Assembly (NCBI RefSeq): GCF_000315625.1
Contig: NW_005434591.1
Coordinates: forward strand, 121,895 to 185,894
Direction of reading: 5' to 3'
From: Guillardia theta CCMP2712
Lineage: Eukaryota > Protista > Cryptophyta
Length of the DNA: 64,000 bases
Shown: positions 41,142 through 50,900 of the stretch, in pieces
Numbering within the stretch: position 1 is the first letter of the stretch
Layout: every line of letters begins with the position of its first letter
The notes under the pieces: generated by a model
Told to the model about the DNA's origin: nothing
Databases searched by the model: none
What the model saw: the letters and a program-made list of their open reading frames with translations, nothing else
Translations under genes and position numbers: made by a program

Positions 41142-43196
41142 GCCGAGAGACAAGACGATATGATACGTTGGTGTATTTGTAGTAAGAGATGTATTCTGAA
41201 GTGTGATATTTGTTATAACCTTGTAGCAAAGAAAATGAAAAGACTTATTAGTCACCAACTTGTGTCAAGCTGTTTGATTACATCGGCAATGAGTAGACTG
41301 ATTTGAATGAAGCCTCCGCAGGAAGGTATCTGATGACCGAATCCAGTGAAGGTGTCATCAAGCCGCCTCCGCAGGAAGCAATCAAATGGAGCACAAGTTA
41401 GCACGAGGGTCTATGGTCTTTAAACCATGAATGGCTGTAGTGCAGCACTGAGGCATGTACAACCCTTGCTGAACAGGCGGGCAAGACTACTGAATCTCCT
41501 CAGTACCGAACTGGTGCGATCACTTGACCGTTTGAAACCTTGAACTCGGCAGCGCTGGGAAGGTCACGGGTTTCAACTTTAGTACTTGAAGCATCGCACG
41601 AGACCGGTCACCATCACAAGTCAGCGGGGTCCAACTGAGAGTGGCCCGGCTCGCCACTGGAGTCCGAGACTACTGGCCCTTCTGATTGCGGCAGTGCAGT
41701 TCTGTAGGAGAGCTTGCCTCTGAAATTGTGGGAGTTGTATGTTTTTCGGACGAGGAGTTTGCCATCGACGTCCCTCCGGTCCCTTGCCTCACCTCTCCTC
41801 CCCTCTCGGTGGCAGCCTCAGGCCGCAACTCAGCTGAACTCCTAAGGAGGCCCGGCTCGTCGTCGGAGCACCTGCCAGCATCGAGCCGCGCGAAACCGTC
41901 TTGGGAGGGAAGGACCGGAAAAAGTCATGTAGCGAAACTGATTCTTCGGTAAATTTCCCTCAGGCTAGAACTTTGAATGGCCGTCAGTACGCGCCTGATC
42001 TGAGTTATTACACCGGGCTGCGGTGACTGAGTGAGCGCTTCCAAGTTCAAGCATGGAGGTGAAAGAGGCAAACTTAAAACTGGACTGTCTCTCAGCTTTC
42101 TGACCGTGCCAGCCCGGCGGGAGAGAGCCCGGAGCCTCGCCGGAGGCTGAGGCTTAGTCTAGCGGCCGCTCGGGACTCAGGAGGCTCGCCATGCTGAACA
42201 CTGTGGTCACGGTCACCGCGGCGGCCGGGCCCAGACGGACCCAACTTGGCAATTCTCCAGCCGCTGAGCGCCGGGGTCAGGGTCGGGCCAGTTCTGCAGC
42301 CTGTGCCGCCCTGCCCGGCCCGGCTCCGAGCGGCTCAGTGACCACGGCGGCCCCTCGTGTAGGACTTGCACTACTTTTACTCAAAGTTAAGTTAAAAATC
42401 AGGAGTGGAAATAAGGGGGTGGGGGTCAGAGAATGCATAAGTCAAGGCCGGGGTTAAGGAAGCCGGGGGGCAGGGGGTGGGTAGGTACTGGGAGGGGGTA
42501 GTTGAAGCTGCTTTTCAGGTCTCACTGACCCGCTCCGGTTATCGAATGACTGTGTAAAGCTGGGGGTAGGGTTGTGTCAGCAATCATCCTTGTTGTAATA
42601 AGTAGGGGTCGTGTCCGGTCCGTATCATCGGACAGTAGGGGGAAAATAGGGGTACTTTAGTACATGACGAGGGGTATGGTAGGGTGGTGTGATGAGAGGT
42701 TGGGTGGGGTAGTCAAATGGGGGGGAAGGAAAAGGGGGGGTATCGAATCTTTGTCATGGCTGTGCAGTGAAGGAAGAAGAAGAGTAGAGACGAGGAGAGC
42801 CGAGGATGGAAGCAGAGTCAGGACGAGGAACTTAGACAAGAGGGGAGGGAAAGAAGGGAAGAGGAAGGAGGGGCAAAGGAAAGCCCCGGATAGACTCGAT
42901 GGCTCAGGTGGCCTAACAAGAATATGCAACATCTGTCAAACTTTGGAATGTGAGAGAAGGGGTTGAGGTCTTGGTGGGGCTGAATTTCTTTTAGCTCATA
43001 TGTGCTTTTCACGTGTATATATGCAACAGGCCGAAAGAAAGTCGGGGACTAAAGGTATTTTGGTCTAGGATCCGCTGGAACCCGTGCAGATTGATGAAGC
43101 TGCAACGTCGTTGTGCGAACGGTTCGTGGTCTTGACAGGCAGGGAGAAAGAAATCTTGAAGGGTTGATGTTTGGGGGGCAAGCCAAGTTTCACATC

Positions 43197-45738
43197 ATGC
43201 GATTCTGTCTACGTTCATTGACTCTTCTGATTGTTCTGTTCCATGCCCATGGACAAAGTTCGTCGACCCCTGCTACCTCGTGTGATGGAAATATCTGTCA
43301 TCAATTACAGACAGAATCCTGCACTTGTCCAAACTCACTATCAGGATGTTCTTGCACCATAGCTATCGGTCTGCTGCAGACACAGAACATAAAACTGATC
43401 AGTTCCAACCTCAAAGTGAACATCAAGTGCCGAGGGCAGAACTCCACCAGCAATGTTTACTCGGTATCGTTTGCAGGAGAAGAGTTCAAGATCGATGCAA
43501 TGAGGCAGTGTGATGGATCTTGCACCAAGATGATCGAGGCGATCAATAAGGACCTCAACATCGCTACCCCACAAGTCTCTACGGTTCGTTTGGACTCGTT
43601 TGGCAGGTCTGATGACTTGGAACTTGTGTTGTGAGCAGGTTCGGGTGGAGATCAAAGCTGGGTCAGAGACATCAGTCTGCTCCAAGAGTCAGAACCTAGA
43701 GAGCACGATGATTGTTGACACAGTGTATCAGACACAACCGAAATCTGACGGGGTCAGCATCAAGTTTCTGGGTAGGAAGAGCCGTGATTGTTCGAGCGTT
43801 TTCACGTGATTGCCAGTGATCGGCATGGTGTGCTGGGTAGCTATTATCAGCCTTCCATTCATCGCCATGCGATTCTGCCGGAATTGTATGGTCCGAAGAT
43901 ATGCCGGCACGAACGAGACCGTCGAGCAAGTGGTGAGTTTTGTGCTGCGAGGCGGCAGAAGTTGGTGAAGGTGCTTGTGAAGGAATACTCGGCAAACAGA
44001 CAACTGGTTGAGATCAGAGAGAGAAAATTCCGTCTTGTAAGAGAAGAGGAGTTCACAGAGGACCATCGTACCTTGATGGAGGAGTATGGATGGAACGTTT
44101 GCAGCTGCCATGAGGCCTTGAAGTGTCGAACCGCAATATTGATTGCGGTGATTGACTACATGAGGAAAAATGCAATCTTGGAGAAGGGGAAGCAGCAAAT
44201 GAGGGATAGGAATGCAAAGACGAAAGGGTGAGAACAACATTTGTTTCAAACCAGTGATCATTAGCTGATTGCGATGATACAGCTATGATGCGCGGAAGCG
44301 TTCGCCCCAGAAAGAGCTGATCATGCAGCTCGAAGACGGGTTCTTGATCGTCAACTTTGCAAACCCCAAGACAGAGTTCAAGTGTGTACCTGAAGTGAGC
44401 TCTGATACAACGCTGTTCCCATCATCGTCATCGTGATGTTTGTGCTCACAGTTGATAGACGTCGTTGTCGACGACTGCCCCATCCTCATCACACTTCCGG
44501 AGGAGATCAAATACTCAGATGGTGTGACTGGAGAGATTCAAGTAGACGAGAACGGGCGGGTGAAGCGATGGAAAGGCAGCAGGGAGTCTCATCAGTTCAA
44601 GAGGAAGGTAGGCTTACGATTATGTTCCTTGTGCTGTCGTCAAGAAACGTCATAGTGAACTCTATAGGATATACCTGATGTTCACCTTTCAGGTTGAGAG
44701 ACTTCTGGAAGAGCTGGAGGGCTTGCGGTCGGCAGCGGTCGAGTGTGTTGAAGAAGATCTCCTGCTGAGGTTGAGCCGGTCAAGGTGCTTCGACGAGACT
44801 GTGACCTTCTTCAACTCCGTCTCCGGCATCGAGATCTTGCGGAAGATGAGAATCGAGTTCGAGGGGGAGGAAGGGACGGACTGCGGGGGGGTGAGGAGGG
44901 AATGGGTTCACCTGATCTCCTGCGACATGATCCACCCGGACCGGAAGCTGTTCAGCTCGAGCAAGGACTACGAGTACGACGTCAGGCCGCAGCTCGAGAG
45001 CAGCGGCGATGCTGTTGTCAGCGGCTGGAAGAAAGTGACGATCTCCTCGACGGCCACCAGGGAGAAGCTCCTGGCGATCGGCAAGTTCCTGGGCAAGTGC
45101 GTTGCGATGAGGGAGCTATTGAGCTTCACCATCTCCCGGCGGCTGTGCGAGAACATCCTCCAGCATGCGAGGAGGCCGGAGGCTGCGGAGGAGGCGAAGC
45201 TCGTCTCTGTTGAGGCCTCCCAGCCCCAGCCCGTCGTCATCAGCCAGCGGCACCCGTCAGTCAGCTGCACGGAGGATGAGCGATTGCTGTGGAACGAGGA
45301 GAAGGAGAGGACGGGGCCTGACGCCGTCGCGCTGATCATCGGGGACGATGAAGGACAGAGGTAAGCTCCCCGCGCTCCTCTCTGTCCTGCCTTCTCCTCT
45401 TCCTCTTCTCTCCTTCAGTTGGATGTTGCTCAGCACCAACATGAGGACGGGAAACGCTTTTTTGCTTGGCTCTCTGACCTGTTTGTGCTCTACAGGCAAA
45501 GCTCTCCTAGCAATCTGGAAAGCTCTTCAGAGATTGAGAGTGGGGAAGAGAGGACGGGAGAGGAGAGCTTTGCTCTGTACGAGCAGGGCGGGAAGGGGCT
45601 GACAAGGCAGAGCTCGTGGATCTCCTTCGACATCTGGGAGGAGGAAAGCTGGAGCAGCCAGAAAGGAGAGGATGACGAGGAAGCCAAGTACGAGGACGGA
45701 GAAGGAGATGGAGATGGACAGGAAGAAGGAGGCGAAGA

Positions 45739-45803
<65 letters not shown>

Positions 45804-46745
45804 AAGGGGATCTGAAAAGCAGTGCGTCCATGGACATCGACGAGTCTGTCCTGCTCGGACTTGACTCTGAGGTCCGATCGTCGCTCAGGTGGTTGCTGAC
45901 CACACGGCTGGAGGAAGCGAGCGAGAGCGACGTGAGAGGTGAACTTGTCCCGTTGACCCGCTGACGCGCCTGATCCCTTCAGTTCACCTTCTCCTATGGT
46001 GACGTGAACGCGGAGGGAAAGGTGGTGACGGTTGAGCTGAGGCCCAACGGAAGCGACGTGGCAGGTGGGCTGAGAGGTGCGGGGGTTCACGGAAGATGAC
46101 AGTCCTCCCTCTCCTTCTCCCTCTCCTCCTGCTCAGCTGCCTGCGTCTCGCAAACTTGCCCCCTCTCTTTTCTTTTTTCTTTTTTTCTTTTTNNNNNNNN
46201 NNNNNNNNNNNNNNNNNNNNNNNNNNNNNNNNNNNNNNNNNNNNNNNNNNNNNNNNNNNNNNNNNNNNNNNNNNNNNNNNNNNNNNNNNNNNTCTCCTCT
46301 CCCTCTCCCTCTCCCTCTCCTCTCCCTCTCCCTCTCCCTCTCCCTCTCCCTCTCCCTCTCCCTCTCCCTCTCCCTCTCCCTCTCCCTCTCCCTCTCCCTC
46401 TCCCTCTCCCTCTCCCTCTCCCTCTCCCTCTCCCTCTCCCTCTCCCTCTCCCTCTCCTTCACCTGGTCGTTCACCCTTTCCTCATCTTCCCGCCCCCCCC
46501 CTTCTTCTCCTTCTCCTTCTCCCTCTATCTGCGAGCAGTCACGGAGAAGAACAAGTTGGAGTACGTACGATCGCTGGCTCAGTGGGTCAAACAAGGTGAG
46601 TTGACGTGTTGATGTTTGTTCGCGTGACGGGAAGCAGGCAGGTGGGCGGCTGAAGTCGAGCTGATCGCCGAGGGATTCTTGAGCGTCATACCTCGACAGG
46701 TAACGAGAGAGCGAGGGAGAGAGCAGCAAGAACAGTGTCGGGAGG

Positions 46746-46820
<75 letters not shown>

Positions 46821-46821
46821 G

Positions 46822-46861
<40 letters not shown>

Positions 46862-47640
46862 AGAACTGCACTGTAATATGCTAACATCTCTGTTCCCTTC
46901 AGTTTCTCGTCCACTTCTCGCCCCTCGACCTTCAAATCTTGCTGTCAGGCAGCAAACTGCTGGACCTGGAGGACTGGAGGGTCAACACACTTTACACCAA
47001 CGGATATCATCCCAACCATCCCATCATCGGTTACTCCCTCCCTCCTCGTCACTCCCTCCCTCCTCGTCACTCCCTCCCTTCCCCTCCTTCCCCTCCCCGC
47101 CCTCAACCTTCACCTCTGTCCGTCCTTCCTACCTCGCTTGTTCTTCTTCCAACCTCCCCCCCTCCCTTTCTCCCTCCCTCCCTCCCTCCCTCCCTCCCTC
47201 ATCACTTTCATGTTCAGTTTGGTTCTGGAATGTCGTCCACGAAATGTCAGAGGAGTCTCGTCTCAACCTACTTCGCTTCACTACAGGTGGGAAAGAAGAG
47301 AGGCAAGGAAGGAGGAGGAGGATGGAAATACAGACAGACTTGTGTTGAGAGCATGGAAGAGGAGGAGCAGAATGGGATGGTGGGAGAGGTGTAGAGCATG
47401 GGAAAGGGGAGAAGATCGAGAGGGGATAGTGGATGAGGAAGAGAGGGTGGGAGGGAAAGAGGAGATGAAGAAAGGGGGGAAGGGAGGGAGGGAGGGAGGG
47501 AGGGGAGGGAGAGGATGTGACGACTTGATCTGTCAGGGTCTTCTGCTGTCCCTGGTGGAGGTTTCGCGAACCTGCAAGGATCGGATGGACTTCGAAGATT
47601 TTCAGTGCAGCGATCGACAAGCATCGAGCAGCTGCCGCAT
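43197..47640 (+). CDS. HECT-domain E3 ubiquitin ligase with N-terminal signal peptide, Cys-rich ectodomain and single TM helix; terminal catalytic exon not found
   Basis: HECT motifs [113 protein letters not shown]..QLPH. Upstream exons from 43197 can be spliced in frame. Confidence 0.8.
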
Positions 47641-47955
47641 GTGAGAGGAGGGAGGGGGAGAGAATGCTGGAAGCAGGGAGAAGCAGGAGAGAGAAAGAGG
47701 GGGGAGGGGAGGGGATGAGGTGGAAAGGTGAGGAGGTGAGAGTGAAGAAAGAAGAGAAGGAGTACAGAGGATAACAGGACAGGACAGAAGAGGTGGAGAG
47801 GTGGAGAAGAGAGGAGAGGAGGGGAGCGGAGGGGAGAGCAGAGCGAGGGGGAGGAGAGGAGAGCAGATGGAGAGAACGACGAAGATAGGAGAGGAGGGGA
47901 GAAGGGAGAAGGGAAAGGTAAGAAGAATGCAGGAGAGCAAAATGATAAGGAGATG

Positions 47956-50900
47956 TCAAGAAAAACGTTGAAAATGATGGAAACAAGACACGTAAGACAG
48001 CGATCTCTTCGAATCCCAATCAATCTCATCAAACTCACGTGTATACGGGCTCCCCACACCGGGCGCAGTTGCCCCTGTCTCGGCTGGGAAACTGATGAGA
48101 AAGAAGGAGGGGGAGGAGGAGGAGGAGGAGGAGGAGCAGGAGGAGGAGGGCAGGAGCAGGAGCGAGAAGGTGAAGGATGAGGAGGATGAGGAGGACGAGG
48201 ACGAGGAACGAGATTTCACTTGTTGGAGTTATCGCTGCCGCTGGAATTTGAGAGCATGCTTTGGTCCCCCTCCGTCTTTTGCGTCTGTGATGCAGTCATC
48301 CAAGGGAAGACAGAGAGGAGAGAGGAGAGATCTCGAAGAAAGAGGAGAGAGGGGAGGAGTGAGGAGTGAGGAGTAAGGAGATAGAGGAGGAAGAGTGACG
48401 AGGGGACAACCTGGTTGCGGCGATCAGCAGCAGAAGTTTCAAAGAATTCTGCTCCTCTTGATGAATCTTTTCCTTTCAGCTTATCTTGTGCATTGTGATT
48501 CTGAACATCTTCAGCTTTATGAGGAGTTGGAATCAGCCCCATCAATCGTTTCTCGATTTCCTGCGACATGTCGTCAAATATTTTTTCTTTTACAGAAACG
48601 AAGAGATGAAACGACATTCGATTGTTTACAAACACAGAGATGCTTTTCTGACATTGAAAGTTATGACTAACTCTTCTCGAACTTGTCATGTAATTTGCAA
48701 CTTTACAATCATATCATTGGTATTGCCACGTTCAGCGTTTCTGACAGCTTTTCACATTCGCAAAAATCAGCTTGTCATGGACGTGCAACGTCTGACGTTT
48801 CAGATTGACATGGACATTTGACAACCTCGTGGGTCTCGATCGCCGGAAGTTTCAGCTTGTGAACAACGCTTGATATGTCATGCGACATCCTGAGAATAAG
48901 TCACTGAAGAAGTGCGGAAGGGAGGCGCAGAGAGAGGAGGAGAAGAGAAGGAGGAGGAGAAGAAGGAGAAGGAGGAGGGGAGGAGGAGGAGGAGNNNNNN
49001 NNNNNNNNNNNNNNNNNNNNNNNNNNNNNNNNNNNNNNNNNNNNNNNNNNNNNNNNNNNNNNNNNNNNNNNNNNNNNNNNNNNNNNNNNNNNNNGAGAGG
49101 AGGGAGGGAGGTAGCGAGGGAGGGGTCAACCTTTGCGGGGGTCTGTCGACGGGAGCGCTGCTGATTGAAGAAGATAAGGAGGGTACTTGTAGGTGAAGAC
49201 CGTGAAAGGGCTCGACGTGTCTGTTAGAAGACATGTTCTCCTTTGACGCAAACGATTGAGACTTTTGTTGTTCTGACTTCTGATGTGCTGATGTGAGATC
49301 GACAGTGAAGAAACAGGACAAGAGGAGTTTGACAAGAAAAGGAGGGGAGGAGGAGAGTGAGAGAGGGGAAGAGGAAGAAGAGAATGAGAGAGAGGAAGAG
49401 CAGCAGAGTCAGAGAAGAGGAGATTGGTGGGAGAAGAGAGATAATGGAGAAGAGATTCAGGAGAGAGGTAAGAGGGGAGCAGAGGGGGGGATGAATATCG
49501 TTGGAAAAGGAGACAAGAACTTTCTCTTTCCTCATTTCCTTCCCTCATGCTCGTTGACAACAGAATGCTGGATTCATCAAGATTTCCTTCAGACTCTGAA
49601 ACAGCTAGTCAAGGTAACGAGAAAGACAGTGAAAACCATCACGTTGGTTTTCTCTCGTTGACATCGAAACAGCAACATGTCTTCTCAACATTGAGACTTC
49701 TTCTTCCGATTGCTTCGTCAAGCGCTGAAGTAGAAATCGTGTAAGCAAAGCGAGAATGATAATCATGACGAGACGATGAAGACGAGGAGGAGGCTGATGA
49801 TGATGCTTACCTCAAGAGCGTGAAGGTCAAGCAGAAGAGATCGTTTGTTCTCTTTCAGCATCTCGATGATGTCGTCCTGAAAACCTTCACAATCAGTCGT
49901 GATGTCCAAACCTCGCAATGGCTGCAGACTTTTCCACGCAGAGCGTCTTCCTTGTTGAGGATCGTCTCTTGCAGCATCTGATTGTCTTGTTGCAGCTTGG
50001 AGATCTGGCTGGACATCTCCGACATCTGAAGAACAACATGTTGAAATCAGCATGACGAGCAAGAAGGAAAGTCATCAACGTCTTTATCTCTGTCACCTGA
50101 TAGTTGTGCAGGTTTTCTTTCACTGCCTGCTGAGTCTTCAGCCTTGCGGTAACGAGCCCAACCTGTGATCAGCAAGTTCAGACGGCCCGAGGACCTTTGA
50201 AAAGAATGAAGCCAGCAGCTCGATCGTATTACAACAACAATGAGGAGTTGAAGGAAGGGGAAAGAAGTTTTTGTCGTGCTCACTTTCAGCAGCTCTGCTC
50301 TCAGCTCCTCCTCTGCAACTCTGTTGACATGCTCCTGCCAACGCAGCTCATCCCCATCGACGCTGGTGCTCTGAACGGATCAAGTCAGGTCAACAGGAAG
50401 TACAGGAGTTGCTCCATCACACTCACGTTGTACAGAAAATCTGACCGAGTAAGGCGGCAGAATCTTATCAGCATTCAACGTCGAGTCACGTTTAAAAGAC
50501 CTTCAGAAGCAGACGTGTTGTTGATACTCAACTGAAGTTTGACGATTACCAAGAGTCTGGAGATACGATGACGCTTACCTTGCGGTTGAAGACTCCGCTC
50601 TCATACGCAACAACCAAGTCATCGATCTATCACCATCCTTTCACTTCCCCTGTTCAAACTTCGCTCTTGTTTCTCTTGCCTGCTGGCGGATCTTCTTGAC
50701 GTGGGCGACATAGACAGAGTTGTCATCCTACAACAAGGTGAACGCATGAAGGAGGACGAGGATAAAGGTGCCGAGGATGCCGAGGAGAAGAAACAAAAGA
50801 GGAGCAGGAGCAGGAGCAGGAGCAGAAGCAGAAGCAGGAGCAGGAGCAGGAGAAAGAGAAGGAGGAGAGAGGAGGAGCAGGAGCTAGAGAGGAGGAATAG

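What the first reader, a model, noticed from the sequence alone, without database searches (positions are those of the whole stretch)
43197..45360. Receptor-like type I transmembrane HECT E3 ligase
Seen: exons 43197-43574, 43639-43771, 43817-43932, about 43983-44227, 44283-44394, 44452-44607 and 44693 onward join in frame through 45-85-nt GT-AG introns. They give a signal peptide (MRFCLRSLTLLIVLFHAHG), a ~150-aa Cys-rich ectodomain with N-glycosylation sequons, one TM helix (FLVIGMVCWVAIISLPFIAM) followed by RFCRNCMVRR, a linker and a NEDD4-like HECT entry (FKRK..). The third acceptor is the least certain. Established: HECT ligases are generally soluble, and ectodomain-bearing membrane E3s (RNF43/ZNRF3, GRAIL, plant RMR/ATL) are RING type. 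Inference: a single-chain receptor that couples an extracellular or luminal signal to HECT ubiquitination. This is the best candidate for an undescribed system in the window.
Basis: partly seen in the sequence, partly recalled or inferred. Interest (0 to 1): 0.85.

Follow-up and report, generated by a model that had tools for sequence, protein, structure and literature searches.

The report
Membrane-anchored receptor-like HECT ligase gene
This alga (Guillardia theta) really does encode a single-pass membrane protein with an outside domain and an inside HECT ubiquitin-ligase domain. It belongs to a small conserved family that no paper I found describes, but this copy has a broken or skipped active-site cysteine region.

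Summary
The seven exons join in frame. The gene continues through seven more HECT exons to 47640 and a last exon near 48206-48369.

The joined model aligns colinearly, exon by exon, with full-length proteins of other cryptophytes and of unassigned marine organisms. These include a Hanusia phi transcript and a Teleaulax protein. They share signal peptide, Cys-framework beta-sandwich ectodomain, one TM helix, basic stop-transfer, about 200 aa of linker, and a NEDD4/HUWE1-like HECT. G. theta has a second, canonical copy on scaffold C17. So this is one gene, not two.

The caveat concerns the active site. The family's invariant LPQ-AHTCFNELVLPEY is interrupted after LPH by about 570 nt of purine-rich intron. 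Four nucleotides are missing just after the Cys codon, in the relative too. No canonical splice gives both the Cys and the conserved tail, so this copy is probably catalytically impaired.

No RNA evidence was obtained. I found no paper on single-pass HECT ligases; Plasmodium PfUT (four TMs) is the nearest precedent. An earlier scan note (s1-448856) flags a receptor-like HECT elsewhere in this genome.

The parts
43197..43574 (+). Exon 1: signal peptide (43197-43253; alternative in-frame ATG at 43167) and the first 107 aa of the Cys-framework ectodomain
   Evidence: In-frame model. 96% identical ORF in the relative (P0001). E 1e-8 to the ectodomain of the L026 orthologue. Invariant Cys columns shared with the family.
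43639..43771 (+). Exon 2: rest of the ectodomain; the TM helix starts at 43765
43817..43932 (+). Exon 3: TM helix to 43869, basic stop-transfer RFCRNCMVRR (43870-43899), start of the cytosolic part
   Evidence: Hydropathy 2.53 over residues 162-192. Aligns with the family TM plus RRRR.
43983..44227 (+). Exon 4: juxtamembrane segment (RERKFRLV...YGW), homologous to the family's RPRRFK...HGW, with a 22-aa insert
   Evidence: 4 of 5 substitutions against the relative fall at codon position 3, two of them upstream of the exon's first Met codon. Colinear alignment.
44283..44394 (+). Exon 5: linker
44452..44607 (+). Exon 6: conserved pre-HECT module ILITLPEEIKYSDGVTGEIQVDENGRVKRWKGSRES
   Evidence: tblastn of P0007 against the window, 49% identity, E 9e-10. 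9 of 10 substitutions at codon position 3.
44693..45360 (+). Exon 7: helix before the HECT domain and start of the HECT N-lobe (Pfam position 2 at about 44912), then the start of a lineage-specific insert
   Evidence: PF00632, 16.3 bits, profile 2-72. 76% identical to the Hanusia phi orthologue P0002.
45496..45931 (+). Exon 8: acidic and (GA)n low-complexity insert, then HECT resumes (LDSEVRSSLRWLL)
   Evidence: The insert is also present in P0002.
45983..46064 (+). Exon 9 (HECT)
   Evidence: The junction to exon 10 matches the spliced Hanusia transcript ORF.
46539..46595 (+). Exon 10 (HECT); an N gap (46193-46293) lies in the preceding intron
46638..46699 (+). Exon 11 (HECT)
46903..47029 (+). 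Exon 12 (HECT, N-lobe/C-lobe hinge region)
   Evidence: PF00632, 25.9 bits (above the 23.9 cut-off), profile 177-216
47218..47286 (+). Exon 13 (HECT C-lobe)
   Evidence: PF00632, 19.4 bits, profile 218-239
47537..47640 (+). Exon 14 (HECT C-lobe), ends ...SIEQLPH with a phase-0 GTGAGA donor
   Evidence: The L026 orthologue has an intron at the same position.
47641..48205 (+). Purine-rich, low-complexity intron 14. Its 3' end is uncertain: 48139, 48205 or 48228.
   Evidence: Stops in all three frames. Enumeration of in-frame acceptors.
48206..48369 (+). Last-exon region. The Cys codon TGT (48221-48223) is in one frame. The family-like tail LSLPLEFES...DAVIQG is in the -1 frame from 48229 (stop at 48367-48369). 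Four nt are missing between them relative to the family.
   Evidence: The sequence is identical in relative L025 over 48196-48293 except 48267 C>G, which is synonymous in the tail frame.

Best explanation
One gene of at least 15 exons (43197 to about 48369, + strand) in the cryptophyte Guillardia theta encodes a type I membrane protein. Its parts, in order, are: a cleavable signal peptide; a roughly 150-aa disulfide-framework ectodomain (an all-beta sandwich in the family model); one TM helix with a basic cytosolic stop-transfer; a roughly 200-aa cytosolic linker containing a conserved alpha/beta segment and the module LITLP..(I/V)xY..G(V/I)(S/T)GE; and a HECT domain closest to the NEDD4/HUWE1/HACE1 class. 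It is the divergent paralogue of a conserved family. The canonical members end in LPQAHTCFNELVLPEY...DG(I/M)LLR. By inference, they are membrane-anchored HECT E3 ligases whose catalytic domain faces the cytosol, where E1, E2 and ubiquitin are, while the beta-sandwich faces outside or into the lumen. Which membrane holds the protein, and what the ectodomain binds, are unknown. In this copy the active-site exon is damaged. Relative to every other member, 4 nt are missing directly behind the Cys codon. A splice that keeps the Cys therefore reads the tail out of frame. The only canonical splice that keeps the conserved tail (47640|48229) skips the Cys. My reading is that this protein is a catalytically impaired, possibly Cys-less, HECT-like membrane protein kept under selection. 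It may act as a regulator or partner of the active paralogue rather than as a working ligase. Shown: the exon structure, the coding constraint, the family architecture and the frame lesion. Inferred: topology, ligase activity of the family, loss of activity here, and any receptor function.
For: Seven plus seven exons join into 915 codons without a stop. Against the relative contig L018 (95.3% identical), 31/9/5 substitutions fall at codon positions 3/1/2 (chi-square p 2e-6). Exons 4-6 alone give 16 of 20 at position 3 (p 2.5e-5). There are 35 synonymous and 10 non-synonymous codon changes. All 3 indels lie in predicted introns and all splice dinucleotides are kept. Pfam HECT hits single exons (25.9, 19.4 and 16.3 bits). 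Full-length family members with the same order of parts are P0163 (Hanusia phi, UniRef A0A7S0F765), P0164 (Teleaulax), and P0161, P0162 and P0165. The joined model aligns colinearly with them. The own-genome paralogue on C17 has ectodomain, TM and linker in one ORF. The metagenomic orthologue L026 has signal peptide, ectodomain, TM and linker in one 512-aa ORF, the same intron after LPQ, and an intact AHTCFNILVLPEY. The lesion is shown by the frames, the acceptor enumeration and the DNA line-up. The same sequence in relative L025 rules out an assembly error. There is only 1 mismatch in 80 nt after the Cys codon, synonymous in the tail frame.
Against: There is no transcript evidence from this organism. 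One RNA run gave 7 reads and no splice joints over 42950-45730, and only about 6% of that run was read. The 3' junction was never observed, so which acceptor is used is a deduction. The preferred tail-keeping acceptor is GAG, whereas 12 of the 13 other acceptors are CAG. The signal peptide and topology rest on hydropathy and the -3/-1 rule only. Homology between the ectodomains of the two subfamilies is weak statistically (hhalign E 0.014). Ligase activity of the family is inferred from sequence alone.
Confidence: 0.7

Rival explanations
1. It is a fully active receptor-type HECT ligase. The Cys-containing splice form is made, and the altered C-terminal tail is tolerated or corrected at the RNA or translation level.
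For: FTC is present in the frame reached by phase-0 acceptors, including a CAG at 48139. The 33 nt upstream of 48229 are identical in the relative. The rest of the HECT domain is conserved (76% to Hanusia).
Against: After the Cys that frame reads WSYRCRWNLRACFG..., unrelated to the family tail. The homologous tail sits in the -1 frame. The single substitution in the tail is P>R in the Cys frame but synonymous in the tail frame. There is no slippery site for frameshifting at TGTTGG.
Confidence: 0.2
2. The locus is a decaying, silent pseudogene copy of the canonical family member.
For: The frame lesion at the active site. The intron is swollen by low-complexity sequence, with repeat inserts in exon 8. 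There are almost no RNA reads.
Against: Exons 1-6 show strong purifying selection against a 5%-diverged relative (35 synonymous, 10 non-synonymous). There are no stops in 915 codons. The orthologue is transcribed in Hanusia phi. The post-Cys segment is more conserved than introns (1 in 80 nt against 7%; Poisson p about 0.02).
Confidence: 0.07
3. These are two genes: a small signal-peptide/TM protein ending at the TGA near 43965, and an independent HECT gene.
For: An in-frame stop follows exon 3 if intron 3 is retained. Acceptor 3 is AAG, without a pyrimidine tract.
Against: Exon 4 upstream of any Met codon changes only at third positions. There is a 1-nt indel in intron 3 in the relative. Every family member, including transcript-derived ones and single ORFs, carries the exon-4-like segment directly after the TM, followed by HECT.
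Confidence: 0.03

Closest known systems
Uncharacterised cryptophyte proteins: UniRef A0A7S0F765_9CRYP (Hanusia phi, 'HECT-type E3 ubiquitin transferase', P0163), EukProt Teleaulax amphioxeia Tamp_06964 (P0164), and the G. theta paralogue at G000:C17 about 865-870 kb
   Same: Same order of parts: signal peptide, C.C..GC.C ectodomain, TM plus basic cluster, RRFK..GW linker, LITLP..Y..GVSGE module, HECT.
   Different: These members end in an intact LPQAHTCFNELVLPEY...DGILLR. The window copy has a 22-aa insert in exon 4, a roughly 190-aa acidic/repeat insert in the N-lobe, and the 4-nt lesion at the active site. The HECT identity is low enough that a whole-genome Pfam scan missed it at E 1e-3.
NEDD4 / HUWE1 / HACE1-class HECT ligases (Pfam PF00632)
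   Same: They are the nearest HECT domains outside the family (E 2e-65 to 1e-49 against P0007). The model of the family's HECT start matches NEDD4, Smurf2 and HUWE1 structures.
   Different: Those are soluble and reach membranes through C2 domains or adaptors. This protein has no C2, WW, ankyrin or other Pfam domain. It has a signal peptide, an ectodomain and a TM helix instead.
PfUT, the Plasmodium falciparum HECT ligase (PMC4022464)
   Same: A HECT ligase that is an integral membrane protein (four putative TMs, ER/Golgi localisation).
   Different: PfUT is 3893 aa and polytopic, with an armadillo-like fold, no cleavable signal peptide and no folded ectodomain. It belongs to the UFD4-like class, not the NEDD4-like class.
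Ectodomain-bearing single-pass RING ligases (RNF43/ZNRF3, PA-TM-RING such as GRAIL/RNF128, plant RMR)
   Same: Same topology logic: luminal or extracellular domain, one TM, cytosolic E3 domain. This comparison rests on established knowledge and was not tested here.
   Different: The catalytic module there is a RING, an E2 adaptor. Here it is HECT, which forms a thioester intermediate. No RING was found by Pfam, and the ectodomain is not a PA domain.

Membership tests
HECT E3 ubiquitin ligases (PF00632) | Sequence match to the HECT N-lobe and C-lobe | tested here: met
   Single exons score 25.9 bits (cut-off 23.9), 19.4 and 16.3 at colinear profile positions 177-216, 218-239 and 2-72. tblastn with P0007 covers all HECT exons in order.
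HECT E3 ubiquitin ligases (PF00632) | Catalytic Cys in the (T/S)C(F/V)N motif, followed in the same frame by LxLPxY and the C-terminal helix | tested here: not met
   TGT at 48221-48223 and the ELSLPLEF tail are in different frames. No GT-AG join from the phase-0 donor at 47641 yields both. The sequence is the same in relative L025. A transcript was not seen, so correction at the RNA level is not excluded.
HECT E3 ubiquitin ligases (PF00632) | Ubiquitin thioester formation and E2 binding | not testable with these tools
   Needs a biochemical assay.
Cryptophyte single-pass TM-HECT family (grouping made in this report; type member P0163 / A0A7S0F765) | N-terminal signal peptide | tested here: met
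   n-region MRFCLR, h-region SLTLLIVLF, c-region HAHG with A at -3 and G at -1, read from the sequence. Family members have equivalent N-termini. No SignalP was available.
Cryptophyte single-pass TM-HECT family (grouping made in this report; type member P0163 / A0A7S0F765) | Ectodomain with the shared Cys framework (C.C..GC.C ... V.(I/V).C ... C ... C) | tested here: inconclusive
   Five Cys columns are invariant across 9 sequences including the window. Pairwise E is 1e-8 to the L026 orthologue. Support is weak between subfamilies: BLASTP E 0.088 to P0163 and hhalign E 0.014.
Cryptophyte single-pass TM-HECT family (grouping made in this report; type member P0163 / A0A7S0F765) | One TM helix followed by a basic cluster, then the RRFK..GW segment and the LITLP..Y..G(V/I)(S/T)GE module before HECT | tested here: met
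   Hydropathy peak 2.53, the only one in 915 aa. Local alignment is colinear. The module matches at E 9e-10.
NEDD4 family proper | N-terminal C2 domain and WW domains | tested here: not met
   No C2 or WW hit in any exon or in any family member at E up to 1.
Transmembrane RING E3s (RNF43/ZNRF3, PA-TM-RING) | Cytosolic RING finger; PA or related ectodomain | tested here: not met
   No RING or PA Pfam hit. The resemblance is in topology only.

The most novel reading that the evidence does not exclude
Cryptophytes, and some unassigned marine protists, possess a family of receptor-type HECT ligases. These would be the first single-pass, ectodomain-bearing HECT E3s. Ligand binding or dimerisation of a disulfide-rich beta-sandwich outside the membrane would control ubiquitination inside. 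The window's copy would be a Cys-less pseudo-ligase kept by selection as a decoy or heterodimeric regulator of the active paralogue.
Probability: 0.2. Interest if true: 0.8.

Novelty: new variant of a known kind. Interest (0 to 1): 0.65.

Why it matters
HECT ligases are thought of as soluble enzymes brought to membranes by C2 domains or adaptors. Membrane E3s with ectodomains, such as the Wnt regulators RNF43/ZNRF3, are RING-type. A conserved family that wires an extracellular or luminal domain directly to a HECT domain would be a new way to couple events across a membrane to ubiquitination. It would also give a simple model for how HECT activity is gated. The G. theta pair, one canonical copy and one copy with a disrupted active site still under selection, would be a natural experiment on pseudo-enzyme evolution. 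The sequences already sit unannotated in public protein sets. The value is therefore in recognising the architecture, not in new sequence.

Tried and rejected
**RNA evidence.** The RNA run X5 gave 7 reads and no joints, so it gives no evidence either way.

**Pfam and own-genome searches.**
- Pfam found nothing in exons 1-6 or in family ectodomains and linkers.
- The own-genome search with exon 1 found no paralogue at the sequence level. The C17 paralogue was found only through the pre-HECT module and family proteins.

**Fold searches.**
- The ectodomain model (pLDDT 71.8) gave only noise-range beta-sandwich matches: best Z 7.1 to a GH86 C-terminal domain and Z 6.4 to the TMED1 GOLD domain; Foldseek E above 0.008; Atlas TM 0.50 or lower. 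No function is drawn from them.
- The linker model (pLDDT 64.6) matched only where the HECT N-lobe begins.

**Readings considered and rejected.**
- An assembly error at the active site: rejected, because the relative has the same sequence.
- A minus-strand gene overlapping the last exon: rejected, because there is no codon-position bias in any frame over 48400-48700.
- A hidden intron in the exon-4 insert: rejected, because it would be out of phase.
- Periplastid (SELMA) targeting via a bipartite leader: considered unlikely, because only about 9 S/T-rich residues follow the signal peptide before the Cys framework. This was not tested.

**Other.** The compound three-ORF query (A1) was only a handle to fetch the relative's contig.
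Full report
**Organism.** The window is G000:C83:121895-185894 of an 87,145,349-base assembly in 669 pieces. These figures are those of the Guillardia theta nuclear genome (87.1 Mb, 669 scaffolds; PMC6260743 Table 1). The closest named relatives of the gene are from Hanusia phi.

**Observation.** By following the HECT homology I added seven more in-frame exons:
- 45496-45931
- 45983-46064
- 46539-46595
- 46638-46699
- 46903-47029
- 47218-47286
- 47537-47640

Together they give 915 codons without a stop. Pfam recognises HECT in single exons at colinear profile positions: 2-72 (16.3 bits), 177-216 (25.9 bits, above the cut-off) and 218-239 (19.4 bits). The domain is divergent. A six-frame PF00632 scan of the whole genome listed 46 exon-level hits elsewhere but none here at E 1e-3. 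The protein has a single strong hydrophobic segment (residues 169-188) followed by RFCRNCMVRR. Its N-terminus has the n/h/c layout of a signal peptide, with A at -3 and G at -1. The mature ectodomain has 10 Cys but only one N-x-S/T sequon.

**Are the exons coding in these frames?** A search with exon 1 found a 155-aa ORF (P0001, 96% identical) on an ENA metagenome contig. That contig (L018, 1831 nt) is 95.3% identical to window 42881-44705.
- Of 45 exon substitutions, 31 are at codon position 3, 9 at position 1 and 5 at position 2 (chi-square p 2e-6).
- 35 changed codons are synonymous and 10 are not.
- Exons 4-6, the linker whose membership was in doubt, have 16 of 20 changes at position 3 (p 2.5e-5).
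- All three indels (1, 6 and 1 nt) lie in predicted introns 3, 4 and 5, and every GT and AG is kept.
- Introns diverge 7.0% against 3.9% for exons.
- In exon 4, two third-position changes lie upstream of its first Met codon, so that stretch is coding and not a 5' UTR of a separate HECT gene.

**One gene or two?** Family evidence settles this. An exhaustive search with exon 7 found the Hanusia phi orthologue (P0002, 76% identical, from a partly spliced transcript). It also found weaker relatives that share the pre-HECT module. One of these, P0007, led to full-length proteins:
- P0163 (820 aa, Hanusia phi, UniRef A0A7S0F765, MMETSP)
- P0164 (Teleaulax amphioxeia)
- P0161, P0162 and P0165 (metagenomic)

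All read signal peptide, Cys-framework ectodomain, TM (LLLGIVFAIVWT...), RRRR, about 200 aa of linker, and a HECT ending LPQAHTCFNELVLPEY...DG(I/M)LLR. Outside the family the next hits are NEDD4, HUWE1 and HACE1 (E 2e-65 and weaker).

G. theta has its own canonical copy on scaffold C17. There a single ORF carries at least 150 aa of ectodomain, the TM and the linker. In a metagenomic contig, the ORF just upstream of the TM-HECT ORF encodes the signal peptide and ectodomain. It is joined to the TM-HECT ORF through introns, one of which splits the TM.

A local MAFFT alignment of the window's joined model with five family proteins is colinear over every exon. This includes exon 4 (RERKFRLV...YGW against RPRRFK...HGW) and exon 6. 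The Hanusia transcript ORF also confirms the exon 9/10 and 10/11 junctions.

A more distant orthologue of the window's own subfamily (L026, TARA/ENA contigs) has signal peptide, ectodomain, TM and linker in one 512-aa ORF, followed by HECT ORFs. Its ectodomain matches window exon 1 at E 1e-8.

**The active site.** Every other member reads ...LPQ-AHTCFN(E/I)LVLPEY.... In the window, exon 14 ends ...QLPH with a phase-0 GTGAGA donor at 47641. About 570 nt of purine-rich sequence follow, with stops in all frames. L026 has an 85-nt intron at exactly this position, followed by an intact AHTCFNILVLPEYESEDVLASKIEEAIKHVNDGLLLT*.

In the window the homologous last exon is recognisable but split between frames. 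DFTC (Cys codon 48221-48223) is in one frame. ELSLPLEFES...DAVIQG is in the -1 frame. Lined up with three family members, the window lacks 4 nt between the Cys codon and the GAG of ELSLP.

Enumerating all AG acceptors compatible with the phase-0 donor gives two classes:
- Joins at 48104-48206 keep FTC but then read WSYRCRWNLRACFG..., unrelated to the family tail.
- The join at 48229 gives LPH|LSLPLEFESMLWSPSVFCVCDAVIQG..., which has the homologous tail but no Cys.

A second contig of the relative (L025) is identical over 48196-48293 except for 48267 C>G. It was fetched with a compound three-ORF handle. That change is synonymous in the tail frame and P>R in the Cys frame. So this is not an assembly error.

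The 80 nt after the Cys codon carry 1 difference, where the intron rate predicts about 5.6 (Poisson p about 0.02). Constraint ends near 48293, where the family proteins end. No frame shows coding-type substitution over 48400-48700, so an overlapping minus-strand gene does not explain the conservation.

I rate the Cys-less splice at about 55% and the Cys-with-scrambled-tail splice at about 30%. Something else (RNA-level correction, both forms) takes the rest. Either way, a canonical HECT C-lobe is not encoded.

**Structures.** Both models are of a family member, not of the window's joined protein.
- The ectodomain of P0162, modelled with a 9-row alignment that includes window exon 1, gives an all-beta sandwich (pLDDT 71.8, pTM 0.72). 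Its matches are in the noise range: GH86 C-terminal domain Z 7.1, TMED1 GOLD Z 6.4, malectin Z 5.6, Foldseek E above 0.008, Atlas TM 0.50 or lower. I draw no function from this.
- The linker model (pLDDT 64.6) has a moderately confident alpha/beta segment without a match. It then runs into the first helices of the HECT N-lobe, which match NEDD4, Smurf2 and HUWE1.

**Expression.** The runs that hold the stretch are genomic (colinear contigs, no joints). The one RNA run laid gave 7 reads in 2.8 kb from about 6% of the run. Expression in G. theta is therefore unshown. The orthologue is transcribed in Hanusia phi.

**Literature.**
- The phrase 'transmembrane HECT' occurs in no held paper.
- Searches combining HECT with single-pass, cryptophyte or apicomplexan terms gave nothing on such an architecture.
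- The pan-eukaryote HECT survey that included G. theta classifies by Pfam domains and never mentions transmembrane segments or signal peptides (PMC3673628).
- PfUT of Plasmodium falciparum is a 3893-aa HECT ligase with four putative TMs at the ER/Golgi (PMC4022464). It is a polytopic precedent, not a type I one.
- The library lacks most subscription journals, so absence is not proof.

**Earlier notes of this scan.** Note s1-448856 describes a receptor-like HECT on another piece of this genome. It is probably the C17 paralogue that I reached independently.

**Mechanism.** Shown: the order of parts and their conservation. Inferred from the positive-inside rule and from where E1, E2 and ubiquitin reside: the beta-sandwich is extracellular or luminal and the HECT is cytosolic. 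Canonical members would ubiquitinate membrane-proximal substrates, or themselves, under control of the ectodomain or of the membrane they sit in. For this copy I infer a catalytically impaired paralogue retained by selection. It may act as a partner or decoy.

**Limits and left-out steps.** All remote searches used single exons or stored proteins by reference. The joined translation was built only inside local scripts, for frame checks, hydropathy and a local alignment. A junction-spanning DNA pattern search was left out for the same reason.

Noticed in passing
G000:C17 about 865,300-870,000 (L024 7358-9912 and L004): This is the canonical paralogue of the family in the same genome. It has a signal-peptide-like LFFLTFAIVTQCSFS, GCDGVTC, and the CYCTVSF ectodomain plus TM plus RRRR plus linker in one ORF. 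Its HECT ends LPQAHTCFNELVLPEYATQDEF...DGILLR and is 63% identical to P0007. It is probably the object of scan note s1-448856.
   Followed up: partly
window 42881-43196: The 316 nt upstream of the start codon differ from the 95% relative at only 2.8% of sites, less than the coding exons (3.9%). This suggests a constrained promoter or 5' UTR. An in-frame ATG at 43167 is kept in the relative.
   Followed up: partly
window 48413-48572: A block downstream of the stop is about 96% identical to the relative, with no codon-position bias in any frame. It is probably a conserved 3' UTR. It contains a strong acceptor-like ttttcctttcag at 48469-48479.
   Followed up: partly
window 45745-45805, 46294-46455, 46740-46860, 47650-48200; N runs at 46193-46293 and about 48990-49100: Long (GGAGCA)n, (CTCCCT)n and purine-rich tracts fill the introns and one exon of this gene. 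The exon-8 tract is translated as (GA)n within the HECT N-lobe insert. Two scaffold gaps lie in such tracts.
   Followed up: no
L026 (ENA/TARA contig, 10,645 nt), L019-L021, L027-L029: Unassigned marine eukaryotes in metagenomes carry both subfamilies with few introns. In L020 one intron splits the TM helix, which made gene callers report an artefactual N-terminus (MERGLKPTRS...) for P0007.
   Followed up: partly
same genome, other pieces (scan notes s1-437166, s1-437520): First-reader notes list other unusual HECT architectures in this genome (a mitochondrial-carrier-HECT fusion, and PDZ-WW-HECT). I did not examine them.
   Followed up: no
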